Positions 1 through 60,602 are shown, counted from the stretch's first letter. The stretch is 64,000 bases of DNA from IMGVR_UViG_3300024358_000009:1-64000; one strand, 5' to 3'. Numbers and translations: made by a program. Notes: a model not told the origin generated them from the sequence alone.

Positions 1-93
1 CAAGTATACAACCCATTATCAGATGTTCTAATTCATATAGATGAAGATGATGACATTGAATATGTAAATAATAATTATTTTAAAATCTGTTAA
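1..93 (+). CDS. 3' end of hypothetical protein (partial)
   Basis: Frame 1 open from window start to TAA at 91-93 (QVYNPLSD...YFKIC*). Confidence 0.5.
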   Translation, partial: QVYNPLSDVLIHIDEDDDIEYVNNNYFKIC

Positions 94-118
94 TATTTTT
101 TAGTAAACTGCGAATAAA
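90..118 (+). promoter_or_regulatory. variant of repeated bipartite promoter motif (TTAA-N17-CGAATAAA)
   Basis: Intergenic, same spacing as other copies, followed by GGAG RBS and ATG 140. Confidence 0.55.
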
Positions 119-139
119 TATATAGGACAGGAGAATACC

Positions 140-298
140 ATGACTAATGAACAAATTGAAACCCGATTGACCACTCTAGAAAAGATGATGGCTACCGCTA
201 ACCCAAAAGATTTACCAGCGTTAAATGCTAGTTATCAAAAGCTTATGGAAAAACTTGCGGATTCAGATGCCTCAGTTGCCTTCATAAAGGGAAAATAA
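140..298 (+). CDS. hypothetical protein (52 aa)
   Basis: Hand-translated MTNEQIETRL...FIKGK*; GGAG RBS at 130-133. Confidence 0.65.
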   Translation: MTNEQIETRLTTLEKMMATANPKDLPALNASYQKLMEKLADSDASVAFIKGK

Positions 299-299
299 C

Positions 300-581
300 A
301 TGAAGATTAAAGTATCAGATCGGGCGATGTATGGATATATACCTACAGAAAATCCAGATGTATTTAATAGAAAAAGCGTAGTATTTATAAAGGGCAAAGG
401 TTATTACTTCCAAGAAATTTTAGTAAAGATCATTAAACAAACATTGGACGGCATAGTATATGAAATAGAAGAATCAGCACCATATAACAATGTAATAACT
501 ATTAACTTGGAAAACCCAAGAAGGTTTAGCAAGAAAAGGTTAGGCGAACTTTTTGACATTCATGTTAAATGGATTAAATAA
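300..581 (+). CDS. hypothetical protein
   Basis: ORF abutting previous stop; no recognised motif. Confidence 0.6.
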   Translation: MKIKVSDRAMYGYIPTENPDVFNRKSVVFIKGKGYYFQEILVKIIKQTLDGIVYEIEESAPYNNVITINLENPRRFSKKRLGELFDIHVKWIK

Positions 582-593
582 GGGAGTTAATCA

Positions 594-776
594 ATGAAGG
601 AAATTAAATATACCTATGTAGTTGTAACAACTACTGTTTGTATATCTAGCTATGAAGACGATCAAGAAAATTCTATTCGTGGACTTAAACCAGATTTTGT
701 TTCTACAGTTGGTGATTGTTTGGAAGAACTTATGGAGTTTTTGATTTCTTTAGAAAAACAAGTGTGTACAAAGTAA
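594..776 (+). CDS. hypothetical protein
   Basis: GGGAG RBS upstream. Confidence 0.6.
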   Translation: MKEIKYTYVVVTTTVCISSYEDDQENSIRGLKPDFVSTVGDCLEELMEFLISLEKQVCTK

Positions 777-787
777 AGGAGTTAATA

Positions 788-979
788 ATGAATCGGCTAA
801 AAGAAAAGTTTGCATCGTCTAAAGTAAAACTTACCAAGCAAGAGACAAGAATATTATCTCTCCTGCTGTACTACTGTAATAGCCGTATAGGCGATGTTTA
901 TGAGACATTTGAGGATAAGATCAGAGAAGAAGACATAGCTGTAATAGCGAAAAAATTAGGGGCAGAAATACCAAAATAA
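788..979 (+). CDS. hypothetical protein
   Basis: In ORF 716..979; ATG 788 chosen because AGGAG lies just upstream. Confidence 0.6.
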   Translation: MNRLKEKFASSKVKLTKQETRILSLLLYYCNSRIGDVYETFEDKIREEDIAVIAKKLGAEIPK

Positions 980-994
980 CTGAAAGGAAAGATA

Positions 995-1168
995 ATGTAT
1001 GTATATGAGCTAATAGAAAAACTCAAAAAATATCCACAAGATATGTATTTGGAATTTAATGGGGCATATGTCTTTGGTTATATCAAAGATGAGGTAATAA
1101 ACATATGTTACAACCATGATGATAAAGGATGGATTTCTCCAGAAGAAATAAGCGAAAAAATAAAATAA
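995..1168 (+). CDS. hypothetical protein (57 aa)
   Basis: Hand-translated MYVYELIEKLKKYPQD...; AAGGA RBS. Confidence 0.6.
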   Translation: MYVYELIEKLKKYPQDMYLEFNGAYVFGYIKDEVINICYNHDDKGWISPEEISEKIK

Positions 1169-1178
1169 AAAAATTTTG

Positions 1179-1207
1179 TAAATAAAAAGTGGTTACTTAC
1201 GAATAAG
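1179..1207 (+). promoter_or_regulatory. repeated bipartite promoter motif TAAA-N16-ACGAATAAG
   Basis: Intergenic; followed by TATATAG, AAGGAGG RBS and ATG 1249. Confidence 0.75.
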
Positions 1208-1248
1208 TATATAGAGAAGGCAATAACACTATTCAAAGGAGGTTGGTC

Positions 1249-1620
1249 ATGGGTTTGGATAACTACTGGAAAGATCAGCATGGCAAAGAAGGATATGTAG
1301 AAGGATATTTTCGAGTTGTAGGCGGTCTTTGTTCTGGCAATGGCAATGATTCATTCCGTGGAAAAGTTTACAACGAAATAGTTCATGAACTTACAGGAGA
1401 GTCTTTATACCAAGACAAAATCTCAAGCGAGACTGTTAAGGAAATGAACGAAGCTATTCAAGAATGTGAATTTGAAAGAATGAGAAAGCTTACCTGTTGG
1501 GAAATAGAAGAAAATGAGTGGACAGACTTTAAGAGAATGTGGCAAGCACATTCAAACGCACATCATCATTTAGTTAGTTGGTGGTGTGGATGGCTTTTAA
1601 TTAATTGCTGGTTTCAATGA
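1249..1620 (+). CDS. hypothetical phage protein
   Basis: AAGGAGG RBS then ATG 1249; GLDNYW...FRGKVY...SWW pattern resembles phage hypotheticals. Confidence 0.65.
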   Translation: MGLDNYWKDQHGKEGYVEGYFRVVGGLCSGNGNDSFRGKVYNEIVHELTGESLYQDKISSETVKEMNEAIQECEFERMRKLTCWEIEENEWTDFKRMWQAHSNAHHHLVSWWCGWLLINCWFQ

Positions 1621-1647
1621 AATAAAAATAGTTTTAAAACGAATAAG
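1619..1647 (+). promoter_or_regulatory. repeated promoter motif (GAAA-N16-ACGAATAAG)
   Basis: Intergenic; followed by AAGGAGG and ATG 1667. Confidence 0.7.
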
Positions 1648-1666
1648 AATATATAAGGAGGACAAG

Positions 1667-1837
1667 ATGAAAACTGTAACAGTAAAGTTTGTAGTTAATG
1701 ATAATGACGAAGCTGGATTTTTGCTTAATGAAGTAGCAGAAAGTATTGGTAATGGTACTGGTTATCCTTTTATTTTTAGTCTTATTGAAAATAGTACCGA
1801 AGATGAGATTAAATTTTTTACAGAGGTAAACTCATGA
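1667..1837 (+). CDS. hypothetical protein (56 aa)
   Basis: Hand-translated MKTVTVKFVV...; AAGGAGG RBS. Confidence 0.65.
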   Translation: MKTVTVKFVVNDNDEAGFLLNEVAESIGNGTGYPFIFSLIENSTEDEIKFFTEVNS

Positions 1838-1992
1838 AAATAACAATGGAAGAATATACGCTATTGGCTCAAATTTTATTTTATGCCCATGATGACACAA
1901 ACAGAATGAATGAAGAACTAGGACTTAACTATACAACTGAGCAAGTAAATGATCTTGGTAAAAAACTTGGAATTCATATAAATAAAAACTAA
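1834..1992 (+). CDS. hypothetical protein (52 aa)
   Basis: ATGA overlap with previous gene; GAGG RBS. Confidence 0.6.
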   Translation: MKITMEEYTLLAQILFYAHDDTNRMNEELGLNYTTEQVNDLGKKLGIHINKN

Positions 1993-2007
1993 CTATCTAC
2001 GAATAAG
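1979..2007 (+). promoter_or_regulatory. repeated promoter motif TAAA-N16-ACGAATAAG
   Basis: Ends 5 nt before the methyltransferase ATG. Confidence 0.7.
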
Positions 2008-2012
2008 AGTAC

Positions 2013-2915
2013 ATGAGCATGAAAGTTTATGATATGTTTTCTGGGATTGGTGGCTTCTCTCTTGCATTTCAGCAAGAAGGATATGAAGTAACTGCCCAAG
2101 CTGAGATAGATAAATATCCATCTTTGGTTCTACAAAAGAACTTTCCGAACATACCAAACTATGGAGATGTTACTAAGATCAACTATGAAGAAGGTCAGTT
2201 TGATGTAATCATCGGTGGGTTTCCTTGTACAGATATATCCATAGCGAGCAAGACAAAGAAAGGCATTTATGGCGAACGATCTATCTTGTGGAAAGAATTT
2301 TTACGGGCAATCAAAGAAGTCAAGCCAAAATACTGTGTCGTTGAAAATGTCCAAATGCTCGTTAGAAGGGGGCTTAACACAATTCTCGCAGACCTTGCCG
2401 AAGTCGGGTACGATGCGTCTTACACGACCCTTGATGCCCAATTCTGCGGAACCCCACAACGAAGACGCAGAATTTATATTCTGGGAGTGCGTGACGGAAT
2501 CCCCGCAGAAGCCGATCCCTTCCACTTTGCAGAGCGTAGTACAGATGAATGTGGACGAGAAGTACAATCTGTCAAACAGAGCTTTGATTGGAATTTTAAA
2601 GCGGAACACGAAGGGCAAAAAGACTTTGCCTACTTTACTAGACAACGCTCTGATGAATTTACTGGGTGCGGAGTATCATCTACATTGATGAAAAGAGACT
2701 ATAAAGATTTTACCGATGTCATTCTAATAGATGGAAAAGTAAGAAGGGTAACGCCAACAGAAAGACTTCGCCTCATGGGCTTTCCAGATCATTGGCATTT
2801 GGATAACGCCAAAGATACAGACAAGTACAAATATTGTGGAATGGATGTTCATTCAGTTAGATATGTAGCTAGATGTTTAAAGGAATATGACCAATGTTTC
2901 AGTTTGAAAAAATAG
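2013..2915 (+). CDS. C5 DNA cytosine methyltransferase family protein (alpha-type chain)
   Basis: Motif I DMFSGIGG, motif IV GGFPC, motif VI ENV, motif VIII QRRRRIY, RVTPTERLRLMGFPD; motif X divergent (YCGMDV instead of GNxV). Confidence 0.93.
   Translation: MSMKVYDMFSGIGGFSLAFQQEGYEVTAQAEIDKYPSLVLQKNFPNIPNYGDVTKINYEEGQFDVIIGGFPCTDISIASKTKKGIYGERSILWKEFLRAIKEVKPKYCVVENVQMLVRRGLNTILADLAEVGYDASYTTLDAQFCGTPQRRRRIYILGVRDGIPAEADPFHFAERSTDECGREVQSVKQSFDWNFKAEHEGQKDFAYFTRQRSDEFTGCGVSSTLMKRDYKDFTDVILIDGKVRRVTPTERLRLMGFPDHWHLDNAKDTDKYKYCGMDVHSVRYVARCLKEYDQCFSLKK
2269..2688 (+). CDS. putative methyltransferase beta polypeptide (M.EcoHK31I beta-like), nested in +1 frame
   Basis: 139-codon ORF inside the MTase; AAAGG 5 nt before ATG; C-terminus TLQSVV...YNLSNRALIGILKR..KGKKTLPTLLDNAL fits the recalled beta-chain pattern SLSDIL..LS..AC.GILRR...GK.LP..L..AL. 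Confidence 0.65.
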   Translation: MANDLSCGKNFYGQSKKSSQNTVSLKMSKCSLEGGLTQFSQTLPKSGTMRLTRPLMPNSAEPHNEDAEFIFWECVTESPQKPIPSTLQSVVQMNVDEKYNLSNRALIGILKRNTKGKKTLPTLLDNALMNLLGAEYHLH

Positions 2916-3529
2916 CCGATCAGTTTGACGACCATTTAAAAGGCCAATTGTTTTGGCACAAAGATTTTGTCAACCACTTCTTGCCAGAGATTGCATCTGT
3001 ATACATGGAGAAAGATTCTTATGTATATGATTTTGGTGCTAGTACAGGCAATGTAGAAATTGCTTTATCAAACATGATTGAAGAAAGGTGTGTAAACTTT
3101 ACACCAATCGAAAAATGTGTTGAGATGGCAGACAGGTACAAGGGTAATCAAGAAAGACTTATTATTGGAGACTTTTTACATATACCAATTCAAGAGTATT
3201 CTTTTGCTACAAGTATTTTAGCTTTATGTTTTGTTCATCCATCTAAAAGAAAAGGCTTTATTGAAAAGATCAAATCTAAATGCAAAGTTGGTGGGGCGTT
3301 TATCATCCTAGAAAAGATGATTAATTTTGAAGGATATCTTGGTACTGCACTCAGTAGAGTAACTTGGCGAAATAAACTTGAGCAAGGAGAATCTATTAAA
3401 CAAGTTGTGAACAAAGAACTTTCCTTGAGCGGTGTTCAATATCCACTACAAGAGAGTGAACTAGAAGGATTTAGACTTGTATGGGCATATGGTAACTTCA
3501 GATCATATATTTACACAAACGGATTTTAA
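2894..3529 (+). CDS. CmoA-like class I SAM-binding protein (carboxy-SAM synthase family)
   Basis: F..IADQFDDH, VYDFGASTG, GGAFIILEK, W.YGNF align with the recalled E. coli CmoA; overlaps MTase 3' end. Confidence 0.75.
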   Translation: MFQFEKIADQFDDHLKGQLFWHKDFVNHFLPEIASVYMEKDSYVYDFGASTGNVEIALSNMIEERCVNFTPIEKCVEMADRYKGNQERLIIGDFLHIPIQEYSFATSILALCFVHPSKRKGFIEKIKSKCKVGGAFIILEKMINFEGYLGTALSRVTWRNKLEQGESIKQVVNKELSLSGVQYPLQESELEGFRLVWAYGNFRSYIYTNGF

Positions 3530-3534
3530 TTCAG

Positions 3535-3563
3535 TAAATATTTTTTAACTTTCAACGAATAAG
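3535..3563 (+). promoter_or_regulatory. repeated promoter motif TAAA-N16-ACGAATAAG
   Basis: Intergenic; followed by ATTATATAG and AAGGAG. Confidence 0.75.
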
Positions 3564-3586
3564 ATTATATAGAAAAGGAGTTAATC

Positions 3587-3775
3587 ATGCTTGAAGAATT
3601 TAAATGTGAAAATGGTCATTTTGTTATGAATGATAATGTGATGTACATGGTGTTGGACGAAAACATATCGCTTGGAGATTTGATTTGGAATAATGACGGA
3701 GATGTTTTTGAAGTTGGTGAAGATGATGATCTGGTTTATGTAAATGAATACTATTTGAAAGTAAAAAAACTTTAG
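3587..3775 (+). CDS. hypothetical protein
   Basis: AAGGAG RBS. Confidence 0.65.
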   Translation: MLEEFKCENGHFVMNDNVMYMVLDENISLGDLIWNNDGDVFEVGEDDDLVYVNEYYLKVKKL

Positions 3776-3789
3776 AAAAGGAATTAATC

Positions 3790-4194
3790 ATGAAGACTGT
3801 AAACTGCTATGACTATTGCACAACTGAAGATAAGAAGTTTATTTGCATGGCTAATGATATGCTTGAACTTCAATCAAGTATGGAGAAAGGCGATTACGAA
3901 TTTGCCTATTCTGTTTTAAGTGGTAACGGATTTGAACAATACAAATCACTTTCTAGCAAAGAAGTTGATGAACAATACGATGCAATCTCGGACTCTATAG
4001 ATTTTGAAGTAGTGATTAGCATTGCAGAAAATCTAAAAGACAATCTAATAACTCCTCTGCTATATCAAGACAGGGCTATGCAATCAATGTTTGAGGATTT
4101 GGTAAACAAACAACCATTTGTAAAATCTGAAAGGCGAATTAAAAACGCAAGGCAAGAAGTTGCTAGAAGGTTTGGCGAGTACGACAACGATTAA
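3790..4194 (+). CDS. hypothetical protein
   Basis: AAGGA RBS; acidic protein. Confidence 0.65.
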   Translation: MKTVNCYDYCTTEDKKFICMANDMLELQSSMEKGDYEFAYSVLSGNGFEQYKSLSSKEVDEQYDAISDSIDFEVVISIAENLKDNLITPLLYQDRAMQSMFEDLVNKQPFVKSERRIKNARQEVARRFGEYDND

Positions 4195-4199
4195 TACAA

Positions 4200-4272
4200 G
4201 GGCTACTAGCTTAAATAGTAAAGCTCCGAACTCATAATTCGGTGAGTGAAAGTGCAAGTCTTTCGTAGCCCA
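4200..4272 (+). tRNA. tRNA with CAU anticodon (elongator Met or Ile2)
   Basis: Acceptor GGGCTAC/GTAGCCC, D stem GCTT/AAGC, anticodon stem CCGAA/TTCGG with loop CTCATAA, T stem GAAAG/CTTTC with loop TGCAAGT, discriminator A, no encoded CCA; G1:C72 pair argues against initiator. Confidence 0.88.
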
Positions 4273-4286
4273 CTAATTTAGAGGCA

Positions 4287-4481
4287 ATGATGATTACTGT
4301 AATAGATTCTTCAAATCAGTATACTCATAACGAATTTAAAAAAGTAATTATCAATCTATCTAATGATGATGGAAAGGAAGATGTTCTTATAACTATACTT
4401 CCAGACGAATGTTCTATTACGATTGAACACTATTCTTCTGGACAGGAAGAACCATACGAAAAAAGAAAAATAAATTGGTAA
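4287..4481 (+). CDS. hypothetical protein
   Basis: GAGG RBS. Confidence 0.55.
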   Translation: MMITVIDSSNQYTHNEFKKVIINLSNDDGKEDVLITILPDECSITIEHYSSGQEEPYEKRKINW

Positions 4482-4495
4482 ACAAAACGAATAAG
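4467..4495 (+). promoter_or_regulatory. repeated promoter motif (AAAA-N16-ACGAATAAG)
   Basis: At gene junction; followed by AATATAG, AAGGAG and ATG 4526. Confidence 0.65.
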
Positions 4496-4525
4496 AATAT
4501 AGACCTGTCAAGAAAAGGAGTTGCT

Positions 4526-4747
4526 ATGGTAGATGTTTTTATTGTTCGATTGAAGAATCGTGACCATTTTACGATGATGTCGAAAATGGACAAGGCAGAC
4601 TTTTGGGATGGCATTCGTCAGTATTCTAAGAAACTAATATTTGACACTAAAGAAGAAGCATTGCGAATTAGCAAGTATCTTGCAGAAAGAACTTGGCTTG
4701 ATTGGGAAGTTTGCAGTGTTCTTGAGTCTAACTATTGGGAGCAATAA
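4526..4747 (+). CDS. hypothetical protein
   Basis: In ORF 4475..4747; ATG 4526 follows AAGGAG. Confidence 0.6.
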   Translation: MVDVFIVRLKNRDHFTMMSKMDKADFWDGIRQYSKKLIFDTKEEALRISKYLAERTWLDWEVCSVLESNYWEQ

Positions 4748-4989
4748 TGATTGACATGGGCGATGGATGGATTGTTACTTTATCAGATAAATCTTTCCTT
4801 AATGATATGGGTATTAAAGAAAGATATGACTGGTGGAATGATATAAAGAAGGTTACTCGTCTTGAGTTTACCGATAAGGCTAGGGCAGAAGAAACTTGTT
4901 CTATGCTAAATAAAAGAACTGGAATGAAGTGGAAGATTGAAAATAGTTTGTTTACTGGCTTTTATCATGAAAAGAGGCAGCGATCATGA
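4747..4989 (+). CDS. hypothetical protein
   Basis: TAATG overlap with previous stop; GGGAG RBS. Confidence 0.6.
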   Translation: MIDMGDGWIVTLSDKSFLNDMGIKERYDWWNDIKKVTRLEFTDKARAEETCSMLNKRTGMKWKIENSLFTGFYHEKRQRS

Positions 4990-5216
4990 AGATAGACCAA
5001 GCAATCAATATGCTTCAAGAAGCAAAAGCTAATGGATCAAAGAATATTATCTTTGCCTTTTGGGAAGCTAATGTCTTTGAAAGAAAGGCTGGCAAGACTT
5101 TTAAAGATAATGAAACATGGGCAAACATAGCTAACTTTATTGATGAGAATATGGATTGGGCTTATGTTCATGAAAGCTTACAGGAAATTATCAGCGAAAA
5201 CTATGTAAAGGATTAG
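4986..5216 (+). CDS. hypothetical protein
   Basis: ATGA coupling. Confidence 0.6.
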   Translation: MKIDQAINMLQEAKANGSKNIIFAFWEANVFERKAGKTFKDNETWANIANFIDENMDWAYVHESLQEIISENYVKD

Positions 5217-5218
5217 CA

Positions 5219-5428
5219 ATGAGCAAAGACGATATACTTCATTATCTAAATGCCAAGAGTGAGTATACTGCAAATGTCAATCTTCGTAATTATACAGATC
5301 AACAATGGTCTATATCATTTGATGAAGATAGTGTAACTATTAGTACGAAAGCTATAAAGAAAAAGCTTAAGTATAATTCTTTTACTAAAAAAGATTTTGA
5401 TGAAATTTTTGAAACATCAAACGAATAA
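5219..5428 (+). CDS. hypothetical protein
   Basis: Packed ORF. Confidence 0.55.
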   Translation: MSKDDILHYLNAKSEYTANVNLRNYTDQQWSISFDEDSVTISTKAIKKKLKYNSFTKKDFDEIFETSNE

Positions 5429-5429
5429 T
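5401..5429 (+). promoter_or_regulatory. variant promoter motif (TGAA-N16-ACGAATAAT)
   Basis: At gene junction before GAGGA RBS. Confidence 0.45.
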
Positions 5430-5443
5430 AAATAGAGGATGTT

Positions 5444-5707
5444 ATGACAACATTTGAAGAACAGCCAAAAACAAAGAAGCCAAGGATGAGCGAAGATAAA
5501 ATCTTAAATGAAGTTTTTATTCAAATGGGAAAACCAGATAATATTAATATTATCAAGGCAACTGCCGTTAATGTATTTGCTAATAGATATAGAGTTAATA
5601 TTTGGCAAAGCATTAACAATCCTTTTTTGCCTAAAGCTGGCAAGATTGTCGCTAGTTATTTTGTAATTGTTTACGATAGTGGAGAGGTGGTTATCAATAA
5701 TGATTGA
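5444..5707 (+). CDS. hypothetical protein
   Basis: GAGGA RBS; NVFANRYRVNIW pattern. Confidence 0.65.
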   Translation: MTTFEEQPKTKKPRMSEDKILNEVFIQMGKPDNINIIKATAVNVFANRYRVNIWQSINNPFLPKAGKIVASYFVIVYDSGEVVINND

Positions 5708-5972
5708 GTCTTACAGAATGCTTTTAAATTATTTTGCAGCAGAAAATACCCAATCAAAAAATGGCGAAGTACAAATAAACTGTAATAACTTTGATAGTGG
5801 ATTAATTATAAAAAATATTGATGATAGAAGCGTACTTATAAAAGTAAAAGATAGAACAGAACCTCAAAATATGAGAGTTCTTTTTTATCCAATCAAGTAT
5901 AATGTATTGGAGAAGGCTTTAAGTTCTTTAGAAAAGGAAATTAAAAATGGTATGGTGGGAAATCAAATCTAA
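5700..5972 (+). CDS. hypothetical protein
   Basis: In ORF 5667..5972; ATG 5700 follows GGAGAGG. Confidence 0.55.
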   Translation: MIESYRMLLNYFAAENTQSKNGEVQINCNNFDSGLIIKNIDDRSVLIKVKDRTEPQNMRVLFYPIKYNVLEKALSSLEKEIKNGMVGNQI

Positions 5973-6180
5973 TACCCTATCTTTAGCTAGATGGCTTAAA
6001 GAAGAAGGCGAATGGGATAACGCAGGAAACACAGAACTTCCAAGCGGAGAAGTTGTTGACGATGATCCAATCGCAAGACTTATTTATTATTTTGAAAAGC
6101 CTTGGAAGTATGAAAGTGAATGGAATAAATATCAAAATTTTTTAAATAAAAAATCTTTACAAACGAATAAGATTATATAG
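5947..6180 (+). CDS. hypothetical protein
   Basis: Packed ORF. Confidence 0.55.
   Translation: MVWWEIKSNTLSLARWLKEEGEWDNAGNTELPSGEVVDDDPIARLIYYFEKPWKYESEWNKYQNFLNKKSLQTNKII
6143..6171 (+). promoter_or_regulatory. repeated promoter motif TAAA-N16-ACGAATAAG
   Basis: Shares ACGAATAAGATTATATAGAAA with the 3555 copy; followed by AAGGAG. Confidence 0.75.
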
Positions 6181-6193
6181 AAAGGAGAAACAA

Positions 6194-6388
6194 ATGATTA
6201 TTCGCACTCATAAGAAATTTGAACTGTGGACAAAAGTTGGTGATAGCTTTGTGAAAGCTAACTATCTTGTTACAGATATGAACTCACAAATTGTAGGTGC
6301 TTATATCACTAAGCGAGAAGCAGAAGCACAACAAAGGATTGTCAATGATGAAATTCTTGCTAATGATCTTACCGCTCCTCGTGATTAG
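6194..6388 (+). CDS. hypothetical protein
   Basis: AAGGAG RBS. Confidence 0.65.
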   Translation: MIIRTHKKFELWTKVGDSFVKANYLVTDMNSQIVGAYITKREAEAQQRIVNDEILANDLTAPRD

Positions 6389-6503
6389 TAGTGGATGCGG
6401 AACTGTAGAGCAAACTGTATCAACAAGTATATCTCCTTATGATTCTAGGGAGATAGACAAAATAAATGTAAGTTTAAGATATACATATACATTTCCAAAA
6501 TAG
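6345..6503 (+). CDS. putative small lipoprotein
   Basis: MMKFLLMILPLLVISSGC: basic N-terminus, hydrophobic core, lipobox-like SSGC. Confidence 0.55.
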   Translation: MMKFLLMILPLLVISSGCGTVEQTVSTSISPYDSREIDKINVSLRYTYTFPK

Positions 6504-6514
6504 GAGGAATAAAA

Positions 6515-6724
6515 ATGAAGATGTACCTTGTTAAAGGTTACAAAGACAATACTCTTAGGGCTGGTTTTCTTGAAAGAGAGTGGGTTTCTAAGAGTGGCAA
6601 ACCACTTGTAACGCTAAAGATTGTAGATCACTACAAAGAACATAAAACAGTTTTTAGGACTTATCATCGTGATAAGCTGGCTGTAATGAAGGTTCTTAAT
6701 GTTGATGATGAATTGTTGGCATAA
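6515..6724 (+). CDS. hypothetical protein
   Basis: AGGAGG RBS. Confidence 0.65.
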   Translation: MKMYLVKGYKDNTLRAGFLEREWVSKSGKPLVTLKIVDHYKEHKTVFRTYHRDKLAVMKVLNVDDELLA

Positions 6725-6745
6725 CTTAGAAAGGAAGATTTTAAA

Positions 6746-7009
6746 ATGGCTACTAAAGGACAGACTTGGAAGCAAAATAGAGACATTACTCCGGAGGAAT
6801 TCGTAAAAGTATTTACCGAAAAAGACTCTGTTGAAGAAGTCGCTGAACACTTTAAAATTAGTGTTTCTTCTGTAAGAAATAGGGCTTATTCATTAAAGCG
6901 TTCTGGAGTCAATCTTAACACTAAAAAGAAGAATTCTAATTCTTTCTTTGGCACTTCTAAATTTGATGTAGATGCCCTAAATAAAATTGTGCAGAAAGCG
7001 AATAAGTAG
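6746..7009 (+). CDS. helix-turn-helix DNA-binding protein
   Basis: SVEEVAEHFKISVSSVRNRAYSLKR is an HTH pattern. Confidence 0.6.
   Translation: MATKGQTWKQNRDITPEEFVKVFTEKDSVEEVAEHFKISVSSVRNRAYSLKRSGVNLNTKKKNSNSFFGTSKFDVDALNKIVQKANK
6978..7006 (+). promoter_or_regulatory. repeated promoter motif (TAAA-N16-GCGAATAAG)
   Basis: At end of HTH gene, exact spacing. Confidence 0.6.
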
Positions 7010-7100
7010 TCATGCCACTAAAACCTACAGCTGGATTTGATTGGTTTGTCTTTTTGTCTTGTTTGCTTGGATTCATTGGTGGTTTTATAAGGAGATAATT

Positions 7101-7337
7101 ATGTACAGAAGGTTTTTTCTAACTACTGGGCTTTCACTCTTAACAGTTGGATTTGCTTTTGCAAAAAAGAAAGTTCGCAATACTGTGACTGGCTTTGGTA
7201 AAACTTTGTCAGAAGCTATGAACGACTGTTATCGTAATGCCAGACTTATTTCAACTTCATATCAAACTATTAGTCGTAGTTCTTCTGGAAGCGGTTCTTC
7301 TTGGACTTACACTATGGTAATTGAATATGAAGACTAA
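7101..7337 (+). CDS. small exported protein with Tat-like signal
   Basis: AAGGAG RBS then MYRRFFLTTGLSLLTVGFAFA (twin-arginine-like RRFFL, hydrophobic core, AFA cleavage site). Confidence 0.6.
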   Translation: MYRRFFLTTGLSLLTVGFAFAKKKVRNTVTGFGKTLSEAMNDCYRNARLISTSYQTISRSSSGSGSSWTYTMVIEYED

Positions 7338-7542
7338 GTATGAAAAATGGGTACTTCCTAGATCAGACTGGACAAGATATGTTATCCATGTTTGTTCTAG
7401 GAAGATGCCTGAACAAATCTGGGTTGAGCGTACAGGAAAAGAAATTAGATTAATGTTTGGTCAAGGCAACGCAGGAAAAAGAGGTGATTTATTAACGGAA
7501 TCCAGTCTTACGAGTATGGGATACAAAATATTAAAAAAATGA
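7321..7542 (+). CDS. hypothetical protein
   Basis: Packed ORF. Confidence 0.55.
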   Translation: MNMKTKYEKWVLPRSDWTRYVIHVCSRKMPEQIWVERTGKEIRLMFGQGNAGKRGDLLTESSLTSMGYKILKK

Positions 7543-7775
7543 AAGTTGTTGTTTTTAATGAACACAACGAAGTTTTTTCTAAAGTTGATAATACTCAGTT
7601 TTCTCCAGACTTTAAAAAAGCTTTTATTTTTAATTGCTTAAATACAGAACACGCCAATATAGTAGTCGAGAAGACTAGAGAGTTTACAGGAAGTCAGAAC
7701 TTGCGATGGAGAGCATATGAATCGCCAAAAGAAAGCCGAAAGAACAGCGATCAAAATAGCCAAAGCAATGGCTAG
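7539..7775 (+). CDS. hypothetical protein
   Basis: ATGA coupling. Confidence 0.55.
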   Translation: MKVVVFNEHNEVFSKVDNTQFSPDFKKAFIFNCLNTEHANIVVEKTREFTGSQNLRWRAYESPKESRKNSDQNSQSNG

Positions 7776-7902
7776 AGAATTGGGCGAAAAAACTAGAAAT
7801 ATAAATCTAGAACAAGCCGATGATATAAGAGAGTTGTACTCTCAAGTATATGGAAATGATAGACTTACAAGAAGATATGATTTGGTTAGTATTGTGGCTT
7901 GA
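7717..7902 (+). CDS. hypothetical protein
   Basis: GGAGAG RBS; overlaps previous ORF tail. Confidence 0.5.
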   Translation: MNRQKKAERTAIKIAKAMARELGEKTRNINLEQADDIRELYSQVYGNDRLTRRYDLVSIVA

Positions 7903-7926
7903 AATTTTTTTTGTGATTTGTACAAT
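7899..7926 (+). promoter_or_regulatory. possible sigma70-type promoter TTGAAA-N16-TACAAT
   Basis: Intergenic, upstream of AAGGAG RBS of 7956. Confidence 0.4.
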
Positions 7927-7955
7927 AATTAAAACTTTAACCGAAGGAGAATATC

Positions 7956-8384
7956 ATGGATAATCTTAAGAAGTTTTTTGGAGTAGCTCTTTTCTTTTCT
8001 TTCACTTACATTTTCTTTTCTACTGCATACATTGTTTATCAAAACTATAGATATGGATTTATGATTAGTGTTTTCAATGCTGAATCACGCATTCTGAGAG
8101 ATGAATTACAGGAACAGCGTTATAAGCCATCTTACGATGATGGATATCGTGATGCTATTATTAGAATGGGAACTCCATCAACTCCGGGTGCTTATACAGA
8201 TGGATTTATGGCAGCAGCAAAAGTCTATCAAAATTCTAGTTATGCAGAAGGATATCACAATGCTATTAAGCAATTTGGCTATCACGAAATTCCAAATGCT
8301 AACACTAAACTTCCTTTAGATGATGTAAAAACATCTAGCATTAAGACTAAAGAAGTTCCTATTAGACTAGCAGAAGAAAAATAA
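7956..8384 (+). CDS. membrane-anchored protein with YxxG(Y/F)xxA repeats
   Basis: N-terminal TM segment; SYDDGYRDA, AYTDGFMAA, SYAEGYHNA. Confidence 0.6.
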   Translation: MDNLKKFFGVALFFSFTYIFFSTAYIVYQNYRYGFMISVFNAESRILRDELQEQRYKPSYDDGYRDAIIRMGTPSTPGAYTDGFMAAAKVYQNSSYAEGYHNAIKQFGYHEIPNANTKLPLDDVKTSSIKTKEVPIRLAEEK

Positions 8385-13263: not shown

Positions 13264-13464
13264 ATGGAAAACGGAAATTTAGTTTTTACTAGGAATTTTG
13301 GCGAATCTTTTACTGTTTATACGCCAAATGGAAATGTAGTAATAACACTATTATCAAATAAATTTAGTACTAATCAGGTTAAAGTATCTGTTAGTGCTCC
13401 TAAAAACTTTAAGATAATGAGAAATGAGATAATTAATACCACAAGAGACAAAAGCCATGAATAG
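13264..13464 (+). CDS. csrA: carbon storage regulator CsrA/RsmA family RNA-binding protein
   Basis: LVFTRNFGESFTV...QVKVSVSAPKNFKIMRNEI matches LVLTRK.GESI.I...QVRIGI.APK...I.R.E; GGAG RBS. Confidence 0.8.
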   Translation: MENGNLVFTRNFGESFTVYTPNGNVVITLLSNKFSTNQVKVSVSAPKNFKIMRNEIINTTRDKSHE

Positions 13465-14737
13465 AAGACATTTTTTACAGCATACTACTGAGTTTGCTTC
13501 TCTTGCACTATTATCAAATCTTCATGCTCAGCAAGAAACAATAAAGAAAAAGGGCAAAAGATTAATAGTTCTTTGGATGAGCGGTGGCCCAAGTCATATG
13601 GACTTGTGGGATCTAAAGCAGGGAGAATCTACTGGTGGAGATTTTAAGCCAATCAACACTTCGGCAAACGGAGTGCAGATTAGTGAAGTTCTTCCAACGA
13701 TTGCTTCACAATTCCACAACTTGGTGGCTATTCGATCTTTGGTTACTAATGAAGGTAGCCATGAGCGTGGCACATACTTAATGAATACGGCTAAACAGCC
13801 TAATCCAGTAGTACAGTATCCAGCTATGGGTGCTGTAGTTTCTTCTTTGATTGGTTCTAAAGAGTTAGCTTTACCAAACTTTATAGGGATTGGTGGTACT
13901 GCTCAAAGAGTTGGCCCAGGTTTTCTTGGAGCTATGTACACACCATTTGTTGTGCAGAATCCTGGTGTTCCACCAGAAAACATTAAAGCACCAGCATCGC
14001 TTGGAGATGACGATGAAAGACTACGCAGAAGACAAAGATTGTTCTATGGAATAGAAGATGAATTTGCCCAAAAAGTAATGCCTCATATTAAAAAGGCTAA
14101 AGATAGAGAAAATTTAGGCAATGTGGCTGAATCTCACTCGTCTATTTATGGTAAAGCCTTTGATCTTACCATATCGCCACTTAGGACAGTATTTGAGATT
14201 AAAAACGAAAACACCGCCACTATTGAAGCTTATGGCGGTAGAATGAACCAATTTGGCATGGGATGCCTTCTTGCTAGAAAACTTGTCGAGAAGGGAGTTA
14301 GTTGTGTTCAAGTCGATCTCGGCGGATGGGATAATCATAATAATATCTTTTCTACTATTAGGAATGGTAATGGCCCTCGGCTTGATAAAGGTTTTGGAAA
14401 CTTGGTAAAAGAACTTAATGATATTGGTTTATGGAAAGATACAGTAGTTCTTTGGATGGGCGAATTTGGTCGTACTCCTAAGATTAATCAAAATGGTGGG
14501 CGTGACCATTGGGCTAGATGTTGGTCTGTTGTCGTTGGCGGTGGTGCAATTAAGGGCGGTCAAGCGTATGGATCAACAAGTAAAGATGGGTTAGATATTA
14601 AAGATAAGCCATGTACCATTGGCGATATTTACGCAACTGTTTATAAAGCTTTAGACATGGATCTTTCTGCTCAAATTAGAGATAACATCGGAAGACCTAT
14701 GAATATTGCAGAAGGAAAACCTTTAGATATTTTTTAA
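13457..14737 (+). CDS. DUF1501 domain protein with Tat signal
   Basis: MNRRHFL; LWMSGGPSHMDLWDLK; GGWDNH; GEFGRTPKIN...GRDHW. Confidence 0.9.
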   Translation: MNRRHFLQHTTEFASLALLSNLHAQQETIKKKGKRLIVLWMSGGPSHMDLWDLKQGESTGGDFKPINTSANGVQISEVLPTIASQFHNLVAIRSLVTNEGSHERGTYLMNTAKQPNPVVQYPAMGAVVSSLIGSKELALPNFIGIGGTAQRVGPGFLGAMYTPFVVQNPGVPPENIKAPASLGDDDERLRRRQRLFYGIEDEFAQKVMPHIKKAKDRENLGNVAESHSSIYGKAFDLTISPLRTVFEIKNENTATIEAYGGRMNQFGMGCLLARKLVEKGVSCVQVDLGGWDNHNNIFSTIRNGNGPRLDKGFGNLVKELNDIGLWKDTVVLWMGEFGRTPKINQNGGRDHWARCWSVVVGGGAIKGGQAYGSTSKDGLDIKDKPCTIGDIYATVYKALDMDLSAQIRDNIGRPMNIAEGKPLDIF

Positions 14738-25216: not shown

Positions 25217-25818
25217 TGATTACTGAAAATTCTTTAAATATAGTAAAAAAAATAACTGAAAAAATTCCAAGTTTTCATCATCATTATCATATTCTATACG
25301 ATATTGCAAATAATATAAAAAAAGATACTATAAATTATGTTGAAATTGGTGCTTATGCTGGAGCTTCGGCAATATTAATGCTTCACAATAAAAATGTTAA
25401 AGTTATATCTATAGACATAGGAAAACCAATAGGAAAACAAAAAGTATTAAACAATATAAACATTTTTTTTAGTGAAGAAAGATTTAAATATATACAAGGA
25501 AATTCACAAAATCAAAAAACTATAGATGAATTATTGAAAATAACAAATGAAATAGATATTTTATTTATAGATGGAGATCATTCATTTGAAGGCGTAATCA
25601 AGGATTTTGAAAACTATTCAAATTTTGTATCAAAAAATGGTTTTATAGTTTTTGATGATTATAGGTGTCCTATATGCGTACAAGTAAAACCAGCAGTTGA
25701 TAAAATAGTTAAAGATTTAGACAAAAATAAATTTGAAGTGATTGGTGCAATGGAAAATATATATGGAGCACATCCTAAAAAAAATAAAGGAAATTGTTTT
25801 ATAGTTAAAAAAATATGA
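25216..25818 (+). CDS. class I SAM methyltransferase (Methyltransf_24-like)
   Basis: VEIGAYAGAS, DILFIDGDHSFEGV..DF, IVFDDY. Confidence 0.85.
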   Translation: MITENSLNIVKKITEKIPSFHHHYHILYDIANNIKKDTINYVEIGAYAGASAILMLHNKNVKVISIDIGKPIGKQKVLNNINIFFSEERFKYIQGNSQNQKTIDELLKITNEIDILFIDGDHSFEGVIKDFENYSNFVSKNGFIVFDDYRCPICVQVKPAVDKIVKDLDKNKFEVIGAMENIYGAHPKKNKGNCFIVKKI

Positions 25819-27086
25819 ATAAAATAAATATACTTATATTTCCATGCGGATCAGAAATAGGATTAGAAATTTTTGAATCTTTAAAATTTTTAAAAAACAT
25901 AAATATTATTGGTGGAAGCAGTATTGATGATCATGGAAAATTTGTTTTTAAAAATTATTATAAAAATTTTCCTTTTATAAATAAAAAAAACTTTATTCCG
26001 TTTGTAAAAAAATTTGTTAAAAATAAAAAAATAGATTTTATTTACCCTTGTATGGATTCGGTTTTATTTATATTAAAAAAATATGAAAAAAAAATTGGCT
26101 GTAAAGTATTGACATCTGATTTTAAAACAACAGAAATTTGTTTGTCAAAAGAAAAAACATATTTAAAATTAAAAAATGTAATAGATGTTCCAAAAATTTA
26201 CAAAAACATAAATGATGTTAAAAAGTATCCTGTATATTTAAAGCCAAAAATAGGATATGGATCAAGAAATCATTTTATAGCATATTCAAAAAAAGAAGCA
26301 AAAATTTTCTTAAAAAAAAGAAAAAATTATTTAATTTTAGAATTTTTAAACGGAAAAGAATATACAATAGACTGTTTTACAGATAAAAATAAAAATTTAA
26401 TTTTTGTAAACGCAAGACAAAGAGCAAGAATTTCAAATGGTATTAGCACAAATATAAAATTAATTAATAAAAAAATATTTTATAGTATAGCGAAAAAAAT
26501 AAACAAAACAATAAATTTAAATGGATCTTGGTTTTTTCAATTAAAAGAAGATTATAATAAAAAATTAAAACTTTTAGAAGTAGCACCGAGAATAGCAGGG
26601 TCTTCTGCAATATGTAGATATTTAGGAATAAATCTTTCAGAATTAACAATAATGAATGAAATTTATGACAATTTAAAAATTATAAAAAATAATTTAAAAA
26701 TAGAAACAGACAGATCTTTACAAACAAAACAAAAAGTAAATATAAAATTTAAATATGTTTACATAGATTTAGATGATACAATAATTTTAAATAATAAAAT
26801 AAATGAAAATATAATTGAATTGATATTTAATTTTATAAACAGAAACAAAAAAATAATTTTAATTTCAAGACATAAAAAAAATATAAATAAAACATTAAAA
26901 AAATTTAAAATAAATCATCTTTTTGATAAAATTATACATATTAAAAACAATGAAAAAAAAAGTAAATATATAAAAAACAAAAATTCTGTTTTTATAGATG
27001 ATTCTTTTTCAGAAAGACTGGATGTAAGTATCAATAAAAAAATAAATGTTTTTTGTGTTAATAGTTGTATGTGTTTAAAAGAATAA
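25815..27086 (+). CDS. ATP-grasp protein with C-terminal HAD-like domain
   Basis: YLKPKIGYGSR, EFLNGKEYTID, LLEVAPRIAG; C-terminal IDLDDT...FIDDSFSER. Confidence 0.85.
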   Translation: MNKINILIFPCGSEIGLEIFESLKFLKNINIIGGSSIDDHGKFVFKNYYKNFPFINKKNFIPFVKKFVKNKKIDFIYPCMDSVLFILKKYEKKIGCKVLTSDFKTTEICLSKEKTYLKLKNVIDVPKIYKNINDVKKYPVYLKPKIGYGSRNHFIAYSKKEAKIFLKKRKNYLILEFLNGKEYTIDCFTDKNKNLIFVNARQRARISNGISTNIKLINKKIFYSIAKKINKTINLNGSWFFQLKEDYNKKLKLLEVAPRIAGSSAICRYLGINLSELTIMNEIYDNLKIIKNNLKIETDRSLQTKQKVNIKFKYVYIDLDDTIILNNKINENIIELIFNFINRNKKIILISRHKKNINKTLKKFKINHLFDKIIHIKNNEKKSKYIKNKNSVFIDDSFSERLDVSINKKINVFCVNSCMCLKE

Positions 27087-54223: not shown

Positions 54224-54468
54224 AAAAGAAAGAAGACTTATTGGAAGAAATCAAAGCACTGGAAGAAATGCTTGAGTCAAAAGATGTAATAATAAAAGAA
54301 TCAATTAATATTATGAAAGCTTTGGTTTTCAAATTTGGCGGTAAAGTTCTGTTAAAACCTGAGTTTATTCAAGCAGCAAAAAGTAAGGATAATTATGTAG
54401 ATATAAAATATGACGAATCTGGGCGTTTGAAACTTGAAGTTAAAGAAGTAGATGAATTAAGAAAGTAG
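54220..54468 (+). CDS. hypothetical protein between dnaE halves
   Basis: ATGA coupling, GGAG RBS. Confidence 0.65.
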   Translation: MKKKEDLLEEIKALEEMLESKDVIIKESINIMKALVFKFGGKVLLKPEFIQAAKSKDNYVDIKYDESGRLKLEVKEVDELRK

Positions 54469-54475
54469 GAACATT

Positions 54476-55141
54476 GTGAATAATTCGACTATATTAGTTT
54501 TTGATTTTGAAACTGGTAGTGTCAATCCAGAAACTTGTGAAGTTATTCAAGTAGCTGCTATGGCACTGCATCCAAGAAGTCTTGCTGAGTTAGGGCAATA
54601 CACAAGTCTAATTAAGCCAAGAGACTTTTCTAAGCTTGAAAAAGAAGCTTTAGAAATTAATAAAAAGAGCATAGAAGAACTTGAAAAAGCACCAGATTTA
54701 TCTATTGTTTGGAAATCTTTTACATCTTTTATTAAAAAATATAACCCAAAACCTGGCAATACATTTTTTGCACCTATTGCTGCCGGAAAAAACATAAGAC
54801 ACTTTGACATGATTATCATTAATCGTTTAGCTAGAGAATTTGGCGATTGTGATAAATATGGAAAACAAAACTTATTTAATAAAAGAAGCGTTTTTGATTT
54901 GGATGATTTTGTTTTTTATTGGTTTGATAATTCAAATGAGTTGCGTGATCACAAGATGGACACTCTTAGAGAGTATTTTGGTATGTCTACTGAGAATGCA
55001 CATGATGCTTTAGTAGATGTTAAGCAAACAGCAACGCTATTGAAAAACTTTATACAGCTTCATAGAAAAGTAGCTGCCAAAGTTAATTTTAAAAACTCAT
55101 TAAGTGATAACATAGAAAGAACTAAGGGTTTCTCTGCTTAA
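54476..55141 (+). CDS. DEDDh 3'-5' exonuclease (DnaQ/epsilon-like)
   Basis: FDFETG (ExoI), NIRHFD (ExoII), HDALVD (ExoIII); GTG start after AGGA. Confidence 0.88.
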   Translation: MNNSTILVFDFETGSVNPETCEVIQVAAMALHPRSLAELGQYTSLIKPRDFSKLEKEALEINKKSIEELEKAPDLSIVWKSFTSFIKKYNPKPGNTFFAPIAAGKNIRHFDMIIINRLAREFGDCDKYGKQNLFNKRSVFDLDDFVFYWFDNSNELRDHKMDTLREYFGMSTENAHDALVDVKQTATLLKNFIQLHRKVAAKVNFKNSLSDNIERTKGFSA

Positions 55142-55150
55142 AGGATATTT

Positions 55151-60552: not shown

Positions 60553-60602
60553 TTTGATTTAGATAAGACACTTGCTACAATATTTTAATTGTAGGAGTTC
60601 TT

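What the first reader, a model, noticed from the sequence alone, without database searches (positions are those of the whole stretch)
2013..3529. C5 methyltransferase coupled to a CmoA-like SAM-modifying enzyme: candidate non-methyl DNA cytosine modification
Seen: a C5-MTase overlaps a CmoA-like gene behind its own copy of the repeated promoter. Established: CmoA makes carboxy-SAM from SAM and prephenate, and an engineered C5-MTase (M.MpeI N374K) uses Cx-SAM to make 5-carboxymethylcytosine. I also recall a natural phage CmoA-plus-MTase system of this type, which needs literature checking. Inference: this pair makes an altered SAM and transfers a non-methyl group to cytosine as anti-restriction. 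By eye, the Cx-SAM-binding Arg of E. coli CmoA (QKRSML, R199) aligns here with Glu (NKELSL), so the cofactor may differ from Cx-SAM.
Basis: partly seen in the sequence, partly recalled or inferred. Interest (0 to 1): 0.85.

Follow-up and report, generated by a model that had tools for sequence, protein, structure and literature searches.

The report
Phage carboxy-SAM synthase plus cytosine transferase
A large phage carries, as one small operon, a DNA cytosine-C5 transferase overlapping a CmoA-like gene, a pairing published in 2025 as the route to 5-carboxymethylcytosine, but the transferase here belongs to a different lineage that lacks the arginine said to define such enzymes.

Summary
A 300-aa C5 cytosine methyltransferase-family gene (2013-2915) overlaps a 211-aa CmoA-like gene (2894-3529) by 22 nt. 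Copies of a repeated motif sit on either side of the pair.

CmoA plus CmoX (plus the ligase CmoY) of Synechococcus phage S-B43 makes 5-carboxymethylcytosine (PMC12783734, Dec 2025), so the basic idea is already known.

It was that Glu at E. coli Arg199 implies a different cofactor. The experimentally validated S-B43 CmoA has Glu at the same column. The clade that holds the window protein is paired in 29 distinct cases with Arg-bearing CmoX enzymes.

What is new is the transferase:
- It is not a CmoX as published. It has GFPC instead of SPPC, and no Arg, Lys or Asn at the cofactor-side position of motif X.
- It belongs to a phage lineage with motif X reading x-N/C-G-M. That lineage lies next to a CmoA gene in about 15 of 19 lineages, with CmoAs of two distant clades.
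- None of 143 canonical G-N relatives has a CmoA neighbour.

Best reading (about 0.5): a second, arginine-independent lineage of DNA carboxymethyltransferase. This is untested, and plain 5mC remains possible.

The parts
1979..2014 (+). Copy of the repeated intergenic motif (core ACGAATAAGAGTACAT at 1999-2014) directly upstream of, and touching, the MTase start.
   Evidence: Repeat family D1. The pattern search finds 7 + strand copies against 0.04 expected.
2013..2915 (+). C5 cytosine transferase gene (300 aa), possibly starting at the ATG at 2019. It has motifs I (FSGIGG), IV (GFPC), VI (ENV), VIII (QRRRR) and IX, and an atypical motif X (KYCGMDVH).
   Evidence: PF00145 at 2e-55. M.HhaI is the best solved relative by sequence and by fold.
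2226..2231 (+). Codons for the catalytic Cys72 and for Thr73. Thr73 sits at the M.HhaI Gln82 position, which is one wall of the cofactor pocket.
   Evidence: At this position, Gln is found in 122 of 143 G-N type relatives, Ala or Ser in 27 of 29 Arg-type CmoX, and Thr in only 3 of 143 G-N type. The role of Q82 is described in PMC3526304.
2835..2843 (+). Codons for Cys275-Gly276-Met277, which replace the canonical G-N-[A/S] of motif X. No Asn, Arg or Lys is present at this site.
   Evidence: Three alignment registers were obtained. In all three the window protein lacks N, R and K at the cofactor-side position.
2894..2915 (+). The 22-nt overlap between the end of the MTase gene and the start of the CmoA-like gene, consistent with translational coupling.
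   Evidence: ORF coordinates. Overlapping or abutting pairs are seen in homologous loci.
2894..3529 (+). CmoA-like gene (211 aa), the putative carboxy-SAM synthase. The residues that contact SAM are kept. Glu175 stands at the E. coli Arg199 position, Ser179 at Glu203 and His22 at Tyr39.
   Evidence: TIGR00740 scores 65 bits. A profile of the clade hits E. coli CmoA at 5e-25. The AF2 model has pLDDT 86 and TM 0.85-0.86 to 4gek, 4iwn and 1im8.
3535..3570 (+). The next copy of the repeated motif, directly after the CmoA-like stop codon and before the next gene (3587). It marks the end of the two-gene unit.

Best explanation
The two overlapping genes form one early-expressed DNA-modification module.

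Step 1 (inferred from homology and partner genes): the CmoA-like enzyme converts SAM, with prephenate as carboxyl donor, into carboxy-SAM.

Step 2 (inferred from gene coupling and pocket residues): the C5 transferase attacks cytosine C6 with Cys72. It then transfers the carboxymethyl group to C5 at a still unknown target motif, giving 5-carboxymethylcytosine, which shields phage DNA from host restriction.

The transferase would do this without the Arg or Lys used by CmoX and by engineered M.MpeI/M.MedI. Its pocket has smaller residues at the two conserved wall positions: Thr73 for Gln, and C-G-M in place of G-N-A/S.

What is shown: the gene anatomy, the family assignments, the conserved coupling and the residue differences. 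What is not shown: either enzymatic activity.
For: 1. The natural CmoA + C5-transferase route to 5cxmC is experimentally established in phage S-B43 (PMC12783734).

2. The CmoA-like protein is closest to CmoA by every measure:
- NCBIfam top hit.
- Clade profile versus PDB: 5e-25 for CmoA, 2e-8 for the next family.
- Fold TM 0.85-0.86.
- It keeps D62, G64, S66, the acidic residue at 89, D117, F137 and E164 (E. coli numbering).
- It scores like the CmoAs that sit beside Arg-type CmoX: 62.5 bits for L058 against 65.4 here. The validated S-B43 CmoA is also below the curated cut-off, at 115.6 against 193.3 bits.

3. In the CmoA tree, partner types are interspersed. P0027 (Arg-type partner) falls inside the window's own 18-member subclade, whose internal branching is unresolved. 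An x-NGM-paired group is nested among Arg-paired ones.

4. x-NGM transferases also pair with CmoAs of the distant S-B43/E. coli-like clade, in L182-L186.

5. Coupling of the transferase family to CmoA:
- In a transferase-centred scan of viral contigs, 6 of 6 family members have CmoA abutting, against 0 of 74 G-N relatives (Fisher p = 3e-9).
- Four of six further clusters, at 36-48% identity to the window protein, also have it.
- None of 80 cellular relatives has it, and 78 of those are G-N type.

6. In M.HhaI, shrinking Q82 and N304 lowers methyl transfer and favours larger groups (PMC3526304). Arg-type CmoX also has Ala or Ser at the Q82 position.
Against: - No positively charged residue could be placed next to the transferable group. 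In SpCmoX the R350N mutant was dead with both cofactors, and wild-type Asn enzymes use Cx-SAM only weakly.
- Most members of the family keep an Asn immediately before the G-M, which may be the functional Asn.
- Some family members have no phage CmoA: Vibrio phages S4-7 and 1.052.A, and locus L262.
- The CmoA-like protein lacks Arg both at the E. coli R199 position and at the position where S-B43 CmoA has Arg. The E. coli 'HHDFK' stretch reads 'TWRNK'.
- The register of motix X is ambiguous, with three different alignments.
- No ligase that would use a carboxyl handle lies nearby.
- Nothing was assayed.
Confidence: 0.5

Rival explanations
1. The transferase is an ordinary SAM-dependent 5-methylcytosine methyltransferase. 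The CmoA-like enzyme has a separate job, such as draining SAM or flooding the cell with Cx-SAM to blunt SAM-dependent host defences, or feeding host tRNA cmo5U synthesis. The genes are linked only by shared regulation.
For: All catalytic motifs of a normal C5-MTase are present. Most family members keep an Asn beside G-M. Some members occur without a phage CmoA. There is no cationic residue for a carboxylate. PMC12783734 itself raises SAM depletion as a possible side role. A SAM lyase gene sits next to the pair in L264.
Against: This does not explain why CmoA genes of two distant clades, in both gene orders, abut this one transferase lineage and the Arg-type CmoX lineage, but none of 143 G-N type relatives. 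It also does not explain why the near-invariant G-N is lost exactly in CmoA-coupled lineages. A second full pair in the same phage argues for unit-wise function.
Confidence: 0.22
2. The CmoA-like enzyme makes a SAM derivative other than Cx-SAM, or uses a donor other than prephenate, and the transferase installs a different non-methyl group on cytosine.
For: There is no Arg at either known carboxylate-binding position. Tyr39 is replaced by His, and the lid helix sequence differs from canonical CmoA. The transferase has neither Asn nor Arg/Lys. The clade sits on a long branch, with a stem length of 3.55.
Against: The Glu at the R199 position is shared with the validated Cx-SAM synthase of S-B43. 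The same clade partners 29 distinct Arg-bearing CmoX-type enzymes, including P0027, which lies in the window's own subclade. No extra biosynthetic gene accompanies the pair.
Confidence: 0.1
3. The CmoA-like protein is a conventional methyltransferase of the same fold, for example a small-molecule carboxyl O-methyltransferase like CysG/BelI, or a second nucleic-acid methyltransferase. On this view it is not a SAM-modifying enzyme at all.
For: Foldseek places the CysG/BelI O-methyltransferases close behind CmoA, at TM 0.75-0.81 (PMC11408123 listed). Pfam sees only generic Methyltransf_11/25 domains. The score is below the CmoA equivalog cut-off.
Against: Sequence profiles prefer CmoA by 17 orders of magnitude, and TM is highest for CmoA. 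The systematic pairing with DNA C5 transferases, including Arg-type CmoX, has no explanation under this view.
Confidence: 0.1

Closest known systems
CmoA-CmoX(-CmoY) of Synechococcus phage S-B43 (PMC12783734; PDB 8YF3)
   Same: A phage CmoA homologue lies next to a C5-MTase-family enzyme. The proposed chemistry is SAM to Cx-SAM to 5-carboxymethylcytosine. The presumed role is anti-restriction. Glu stands at the E. coli R199 column of the CmoA.
   Different: The transferase has GFPC rather than SPPC and no Arg350 equivalent. It is only 19-22% identical to SpCmoX (alignments A2, A3, A6), and 8YF3 ranks 28th in the fold search. The gene order is transferase first, with a 22-nt overlap. There is no CmoY-type ligase. 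The CmoA belongs to a separate, shorter clade (about 22% identity) that also lacks the Arg which SpCmoA has one helical turn later.
E. coli CmoA/CmoB tRNA cmo5U pathway (PDB 4GEK, 4IWN)
   Same: It is the best sequence and fold match for the CmoA-like protein, and the SAM-contacting residues are conserved.
   Different: There is no CmoB partner, and the acceptor enzyme is a DNA C5 transferase. Arg199 is Glu, Tyr39 is His, and the C-terminal segment is shorter.
Engineered carboxymethyltransferases M.MpeI N374K and M.MedI N377K (PMC12015181)
   Same: These are C5-MTases redirected to Cx-SAM by changing the motif X Asn.
   Different: Those gain a Lys for a salt bridge, whereas the window enzyme has Cys/Gly/Met there and no cation. 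One neighbouring MTase in locus L182 does have G-K.
Sterically engineered M.HhaI Q82A/Y254S/N304A (PMC3526304)
   Same: The two conserved pocket positions (Q82 and the motif X Asn) carry smaller residues. In M.HhaI this lowers methyl transfer and favours bulkier groups.
   Different: That is a laboratory construct used with synthetic propargylic cofactors. Here the changes are natural (Thr73 and C-G-M), and the Y254 equivalent is unknown.
CmoA homologues in natural-product pathways (TglE/TglF, MccS), and the CysG/BelI O-methyltransferases
   Same: They share the fold family. TglE and MccS make Cx-SAM for a dedicated partner transferase (PMC10491745).
   Different: Their acceptors are peptides or nucleotide antibiotics, not DNA. 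CysG and BelI are true methyltransferases and are only fold relatives.

Membership tests
CmoX (DNA cytosine C5-carboxymethyltransferase as defined in PMC12783734) | C5-MTase fold with a catalytic Pro-Cys nucleophile | tested here: met
   PF00145 at 2e-55. GFPC with Cys72. The fold matches M.HhaI and M.HaeIII, and 8YF3 at TMq 0.61.
CmoX (DNA cytosine C5-carboxymethyltransferase as defined in PMC12783734) | 'SPPC' form of motif IV | tested here: not met
   The window protein has G-F-P-C-T-D.
CmoX (DNA cytosine C5-carboxymethyltransferase as defined in PMC12783734) | Arg at the M.HhaI Asn304 position (R350), which binds the Cx-SAM carboxylate | tested here: not met
   Motif X reads K-Y-C-G-M-D-V-H. 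Under each of three alignment registers the residue is Cys or Met, or the position is deleted. The exact register is unresolved.
CmoX (DNA cytosine C5-carboxymethyltransferase as defined in PMC12783734) | Genomic association with a phage CmoA | tested here: met
   The pair overlaps in the window and is conserved in homologues.
CmoX (DNA cytosine C5-carboxymethyltransferase as defined in PMC12783734) | Transfers carboxymethyl from Cx-SAM and does not use SAM | not testable with these tools
   This needs an enzyme assay or LC-MS of nucleosides.
CmoA (carboxy-SAM synthase) | Passes the curated equivalog model (TIGR00740, cut-off 193.3 bits) | tested here: not met
   The window protein scores 65.4 bits. 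The validated S-B43 CmoA (115.6 bits) and CmoAs beside Arg-type CmoX (62.5 bits) also fail, so the cut-off does not discriminate phage members.
CmoA (carboxy-SAM synthase) | CmoA-type Rossmann fold with lid helices, closest to solved CmoA structures | tested here: met
   The AF2 model has pLDDT 86.2. TMq is 0.85-0.86 to 4gek, 4iwn and 1im8, ahead of CysG/BelI at 0.75-0.81.
CmoA (carboxy-SAM synthase) | Residues that contact the SAM moiety (E. coli Y39, D62, G64, S66, D89, D117, F137, E164) | tested here: met
   All are conserved except Y39, which is His, and D89, which is Glu (acidic character kept).
CmoA (carboxy-SAM synthase) | Arg199 salt bridge to the carboxylate (PMC3663124) | tested here: not met
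   Glu175 stands at that column. The same is true of the active S-B43 CmoA, so this feature does not define phage CmoAs. Unlike SpCmoA, the window protein also lacks Arg four residues later, where it has Ser179.
CmoA (carboxy-SAM synthase) | Makes Cx-SAM from SAM and prephenate | not testable with these tools
   This needs an enzyme assay.
Canonical SAM-dependent DNA C5-methyltransferase (PF00145) | Conserved G-N dipeptide of motix X lining the methyl side of the cofactor | tested here: not met
   143 of the 148 distinct relatives without a CmoA neighbour have G-N (3 more keep the Asn after S or R; 2 read GS), and the window protein does not.

The most novel reading that the evidence does not exclude
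This CmoA clade lacks Arg at both known carboxylate positions, and its partner transferase has no cationic pocket residue. Together they might make and transfer something other than a carboxymethyl group, for example a neutral or differently charged SAM-derived group, giving a cytosine modification not yet described. A milder version, which I rate at about 0.5, is that the product is 5cxmC made by a second, arginine-independent enzyme lineage.
Probability: 0.1. Interest if true: 0.85.

Novelty: new variant of a known kind. Interest (0 to 1): 0.55.

Why it matters
The only published definition of natural DNA carboxymethyltransferases selects them by SPPC plus Arg350 (PMC12783734), and so misses this lineage.

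If the x-N/C-G-M enzymes do use Cx-SAM, three things follow:
- 5-carboxymethylcytosine, or a relative of it, is more widespread in phages than the published census suggests.
- Cofactor selectivity can be reached without a salt bridge.
- A compact 300-aa enzyme with its own 211-aa cofactor synthase becomes a candidate tool for orthogonal DNA labelling and sequencing chemistry.

If instead they make 5mC, the strict coupling to CmoA would point to an unrecognised role of Cx-SAM or SAM depletion in infection.

Both outcomes can be tested with two synthetic genes in laboratory E. coli.

Tried and rejected
- Megablast of window 1-8000 against GenBank phages found nothing. The phage is known only from metagenomes: IMG/VR contigs of 206 and 221 kb.
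- I first read motif X as 'G-M replaces G-N', from the MAFFT and phmmer output. I then found that MAFFT had actually offset the columns. An ungapped, helix-anchored scan and an HMM of stacked G-N sequences put Cys275 (Asn in most of the family) on the Asn column. hhalign instead deletes the N-A dipeptide. I therefore claim only that the window protein has no Asn, Arg or Lys there.
- A specificity-position comparison on an automatic alignment failed, because the columns were misaligned, and it was dropped.
- I looked for a CmoY-like ligase near this and other x-NGM modules and found none. An ATP-grasp gene 22 kb away is too far to link.
- A scan of 185,579 species genomes found only G-N type relatives matching the N-terminal domain, and no cellular member of the family among the best 80.
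- The upstream 208-aa gene of Vibrio phage S4-7 is not CmoA-like.

Full report
**What is there.**
- The window holds, on the + strand, a 300-aa ORF at 2013-2915 and a 211-aa ORF at 2894-3529. They overlap by 22 nt.
- The first ORF is a full-length C5 cytosine methyltransferase-family protein: PF00145 at 2e-55 and TIGR00675 at 4.5e-52. M.HhaI is its best solved relative.
- The second ORF has only weak generic Pfam hits, but CmoA is its best match in every library:
  - TIGR00740 at 6e-18 (65 bits; the next family scores 18 bits).
  - E. coli CmoA structures 4iwn/4gek at 1.6e-9.
  - phrog_4752 at 6e-31.
- A motif ACGAATAAG-NN-TAYAT occurs seven times, all on the + strand, against 0.04 expected.
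- One copy ends at the MTase start and the next follows the CmoA-like stop. The pair therefore looks like its own two-gene unit.
- Whether the motif is a promoter is untested.
- Homologues start MKV/MLKV, so translation may begin at 2019.

**Literature.**
- In Synechococcus phage S-B43, CmoA makes carboxy-SAM and CmoX transfers the carboxymethyl group to cytosine C5 in GC motifs. CmoY then ligates glycine.
- The authors define CmoX by an SPPC motif and by Arg350, which replaces M.HhaI Asn304 and touches the Cx-SAM carboxylate. The R350N mutant is inactive.
- They count 5,615 such CmoX sequences and 4,257 CmoA sequences.
- A full-text search found no other paper on natural CmoX. The general idea in the finding is therefore already known.

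**Is the second gene a CmoA?**
- A profile of its clade hits E. coli CmoA at 5e-25 and H. influenzae YecO at 1.4e-21. The next family follows at 2e-8.
- An AlphaFold2 model (pLDDT 86, pTM 0.83) is closest to 4gek, 4iwn and 1im8, at TMq 0.85-0.86. The SAM- and metal-dependent O-methyltransferases CysG and BelI follow at 0.75-0.81.
- The residues that hold the SAM moiety in E. coli CmoA (PMC3663124) are kept, except that Tyr39 is His.
- The protein fails the curated CmoA cut-off. So does the biochemically validated S-B43 CmoA (115.6 against 193.3 bits), and so do clade members that sit beside Arg-type CmoX (62.5 bits).

**The R199 argument.**
E. coli K198-R199 aligns with K174-E175.
- The active S-B43 enzyme also has Glu at that column, in a gapless BLASTP alignment, and has Arg four residues later, where E. 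coli has Glu.
- Other phage CmoAs have Q, D, E or A at the column.
- The window protein belongs to a well-supported clade (100/100) with the signature K-E-L-S-L-S-G. It has Arg at neither position.
- This clade is partnered with 29 distinct Arg-bearing, mostly SPPC-type transferases. One of them, P0027, lies in the window's own subclade.
- The simplest reading is that the clade makes Cx-SAM and binds the carboxylate some other way. Arg155 is conserved in the clade and is a candidate, but that is inference only.
- The Glu therefore gives no support for a different cofactor.

**The transferase is the unusual part.**
- It has GFPC-T-D, not SPPC. Motif X reads K-Y-C-G-M-D-V-H instead of x-G-N-A/S-V or x-G-R-M/A-V.
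- The register against canonical enzymes is not settled. In none of the three registers does the window protein offer Asn, Arg or Lys at the site:
  - phmmer puts Met277 on Asn304.
  - An ungapped, helix-anchored scan and an HMM of stacked G-N sequences put Cys275 there.
  - hhalign deletes the N-A dipeptide.
- The family as a whole reads x-N-G-M, with Asn in 14 of about 15 clusters at 50% identity. The window phage and its closest relatives have Cys.
- The residue after the catalytic Cys, at the M.HhaI Gln82 position, is Thr. Across relatives it is:
  - Gln in 122 of 143 G-N type sequences.
  - Ala or Ser in 27 of 29 Arg-type CmoX.
  - Thr in 3 of 143 G-N type sequences.
- In M.HhaI, Gln82 and Asn304 line the pocket around the transferable group. 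Shrinking them lowers methyl transfer and favours larger groups (PMC3526304).
- By fold, the protein sits with M.HhaI and M.HaeIII. SpCmoX ranks 28th. It is therefore an independent lineage, not a diverged CmoX.

**Gene coupling.**
- Among 80 viral loci found through the CmoA-like protein, 70 have a same-strand C5 transferase. In most it abuts or overlaps the CmoA-like gene; in a few it lies up to about 1.4 kb away. Of the 10 without one, 6 are cut off at the contig edge and 4 (L074, L080, L096, L097) were not examined further.
- Searches that start from the transferase are unbiased with respect to CmoA:

| Set searched | With CmoA within 4 kb | Without |
|---|---|---|
| Viral contigs, x-N/C-G-M family | 6 | 0 |
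| Viral contigs, G-N type relatives | 0 | 74 |
| Closest cellular relatives (78 are G-N) | 0 | 80 |

- For the viral contigs, Fisher's exact test gives p = 3e-9.
- Six further family clusters, at 36-48% identity to the window protein, gave four with CmoA, one without, and one contig too short to tell.
- Both gene orders occur.
- The family pairs with CmoAs of two distant clades, including the clade of the validated S-B43 enzyme.
- The exceptions are Vibrio phages S4-7, 1.052.A and 1.233. Their hosts belong to a group that makes its own Cx-SAM (my own knowledge; PMC12783734 cites the Vibrio vulnificus CmoB structure). SpCmoX was shown to work on host Cx-SAM in E. coli.
- Other non-Asn partners of CmoA were also seen: G-K, C-S-G-I and possibly G-G.

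**Conclusion.**
- Best explanation, at about 0.5: this is a Cx-SAM synthase plus a DNA carboxymethyltransferase of a second, arginine-independent lineage.
- The main rival, at about 0.2, is an ordinary 5mC methyltransferase whose CmoA neighbour has another role.
- No activity was measured. The motif X register needs a structural superposition, which these tools could not provide.

Noticed in passing
L030 3090-4636 (contig IMGVR_UViG_3300024358_000009, about 161-163 kb; outside the window): The same phage contig carries a second transferase + CmoA-like pair. The transferase is 74% identical to the window's and also reads C-G-M; the CmoA-like protein is 71% identical (tblastn). Nearby is a 91% identical paralogue of the window's DUF1501 gene (13457-14737). 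The same arrangement appears in a second, 221-kb assembly. The repeated motif is absent there.
   Followed up: partly
window 1199, 1639, 1999, 3555, 4487, 6163, 12902 (+ strand): A 16-nt motif, ACGAATAAG-NN-TAYAT, often preceded by TAAATAAAAA, occurs seven times in the first 13 kb, always on the + strand and before gene starts. It is probably an early promoter or regulatory site of this phage.
   Followed up: partly
window 4200-4273 (+): A tRNA-Met (CAT) gene lies about 700 nt downstream of the module.
   Followed up: no
window 8460-32307: A large cluster resembling sugar or surface-polymer biosynthesis. It includes several glycosyltransferases, a DegT-type aminotransferase fragment, DUF5672, an ATE_C-like protein, a GT2-methyltransferase fusion and an ATP-grasp ligase (25815-27086). 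More glycosyltransferases lie at 57177-61436.
   Followed up: no
window 13457-14737 (+): A DUF1501 protein (311 bits) whose N-terminus looks like a twin-arginine signal (MNRRHFLQ...). This is unusual cargo for a phage. It is duplicated at 91% identity elsewhere in the genome.
   Followed up: partly
window 52310-56776 (+): A DNA polymerase III alpha-like gene is split into two ORFs (52310-54223 and 55151-56776). Between them is a 221-aa ORF that matches a polymerase exonuclease subunit family.
   Followed up: no
L017 75-2006; also P0032 and P0033: In some relatives the transferase gene is interrupted by an intein with a LAGLIDADG domain. Judging from the GFPC-F junction in P0032 and P0033, it is inserted right after the catalytic Pro-Cys.
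   Followed up: no
L264 3001-5239: In one relative the transferase + CmoA-like pair is followed directly by a SAM lyase gene (PF23780). This places SAM destruction and SAM carboxylation in one cluster.
   Followed up: no
L182 2193-6631; L185 4001-6520; L025 130-1792: Some CmoA genes are flanked by more than one DNA methyltransferase-family gene. These include a C5 type with G-K at motif X (mirroring the engineered N374K), a type reading C-S-G-I-P, and an N6/N4 methylase.
   Followed up: partly
L268 3453-5121 (Erwinia phage vB_EamM_Y3): The cultured Erwinia, Dickeya and Yersinia jumbo phages encode a CmoA-like protein. In Erwinia phage Y3, the only one whose neighbourhood was examined, it is followed by an asparagine-synthase-like (CmoY-type) gene, with no C5 transferase within 3.5 kb.
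   Followed up: no
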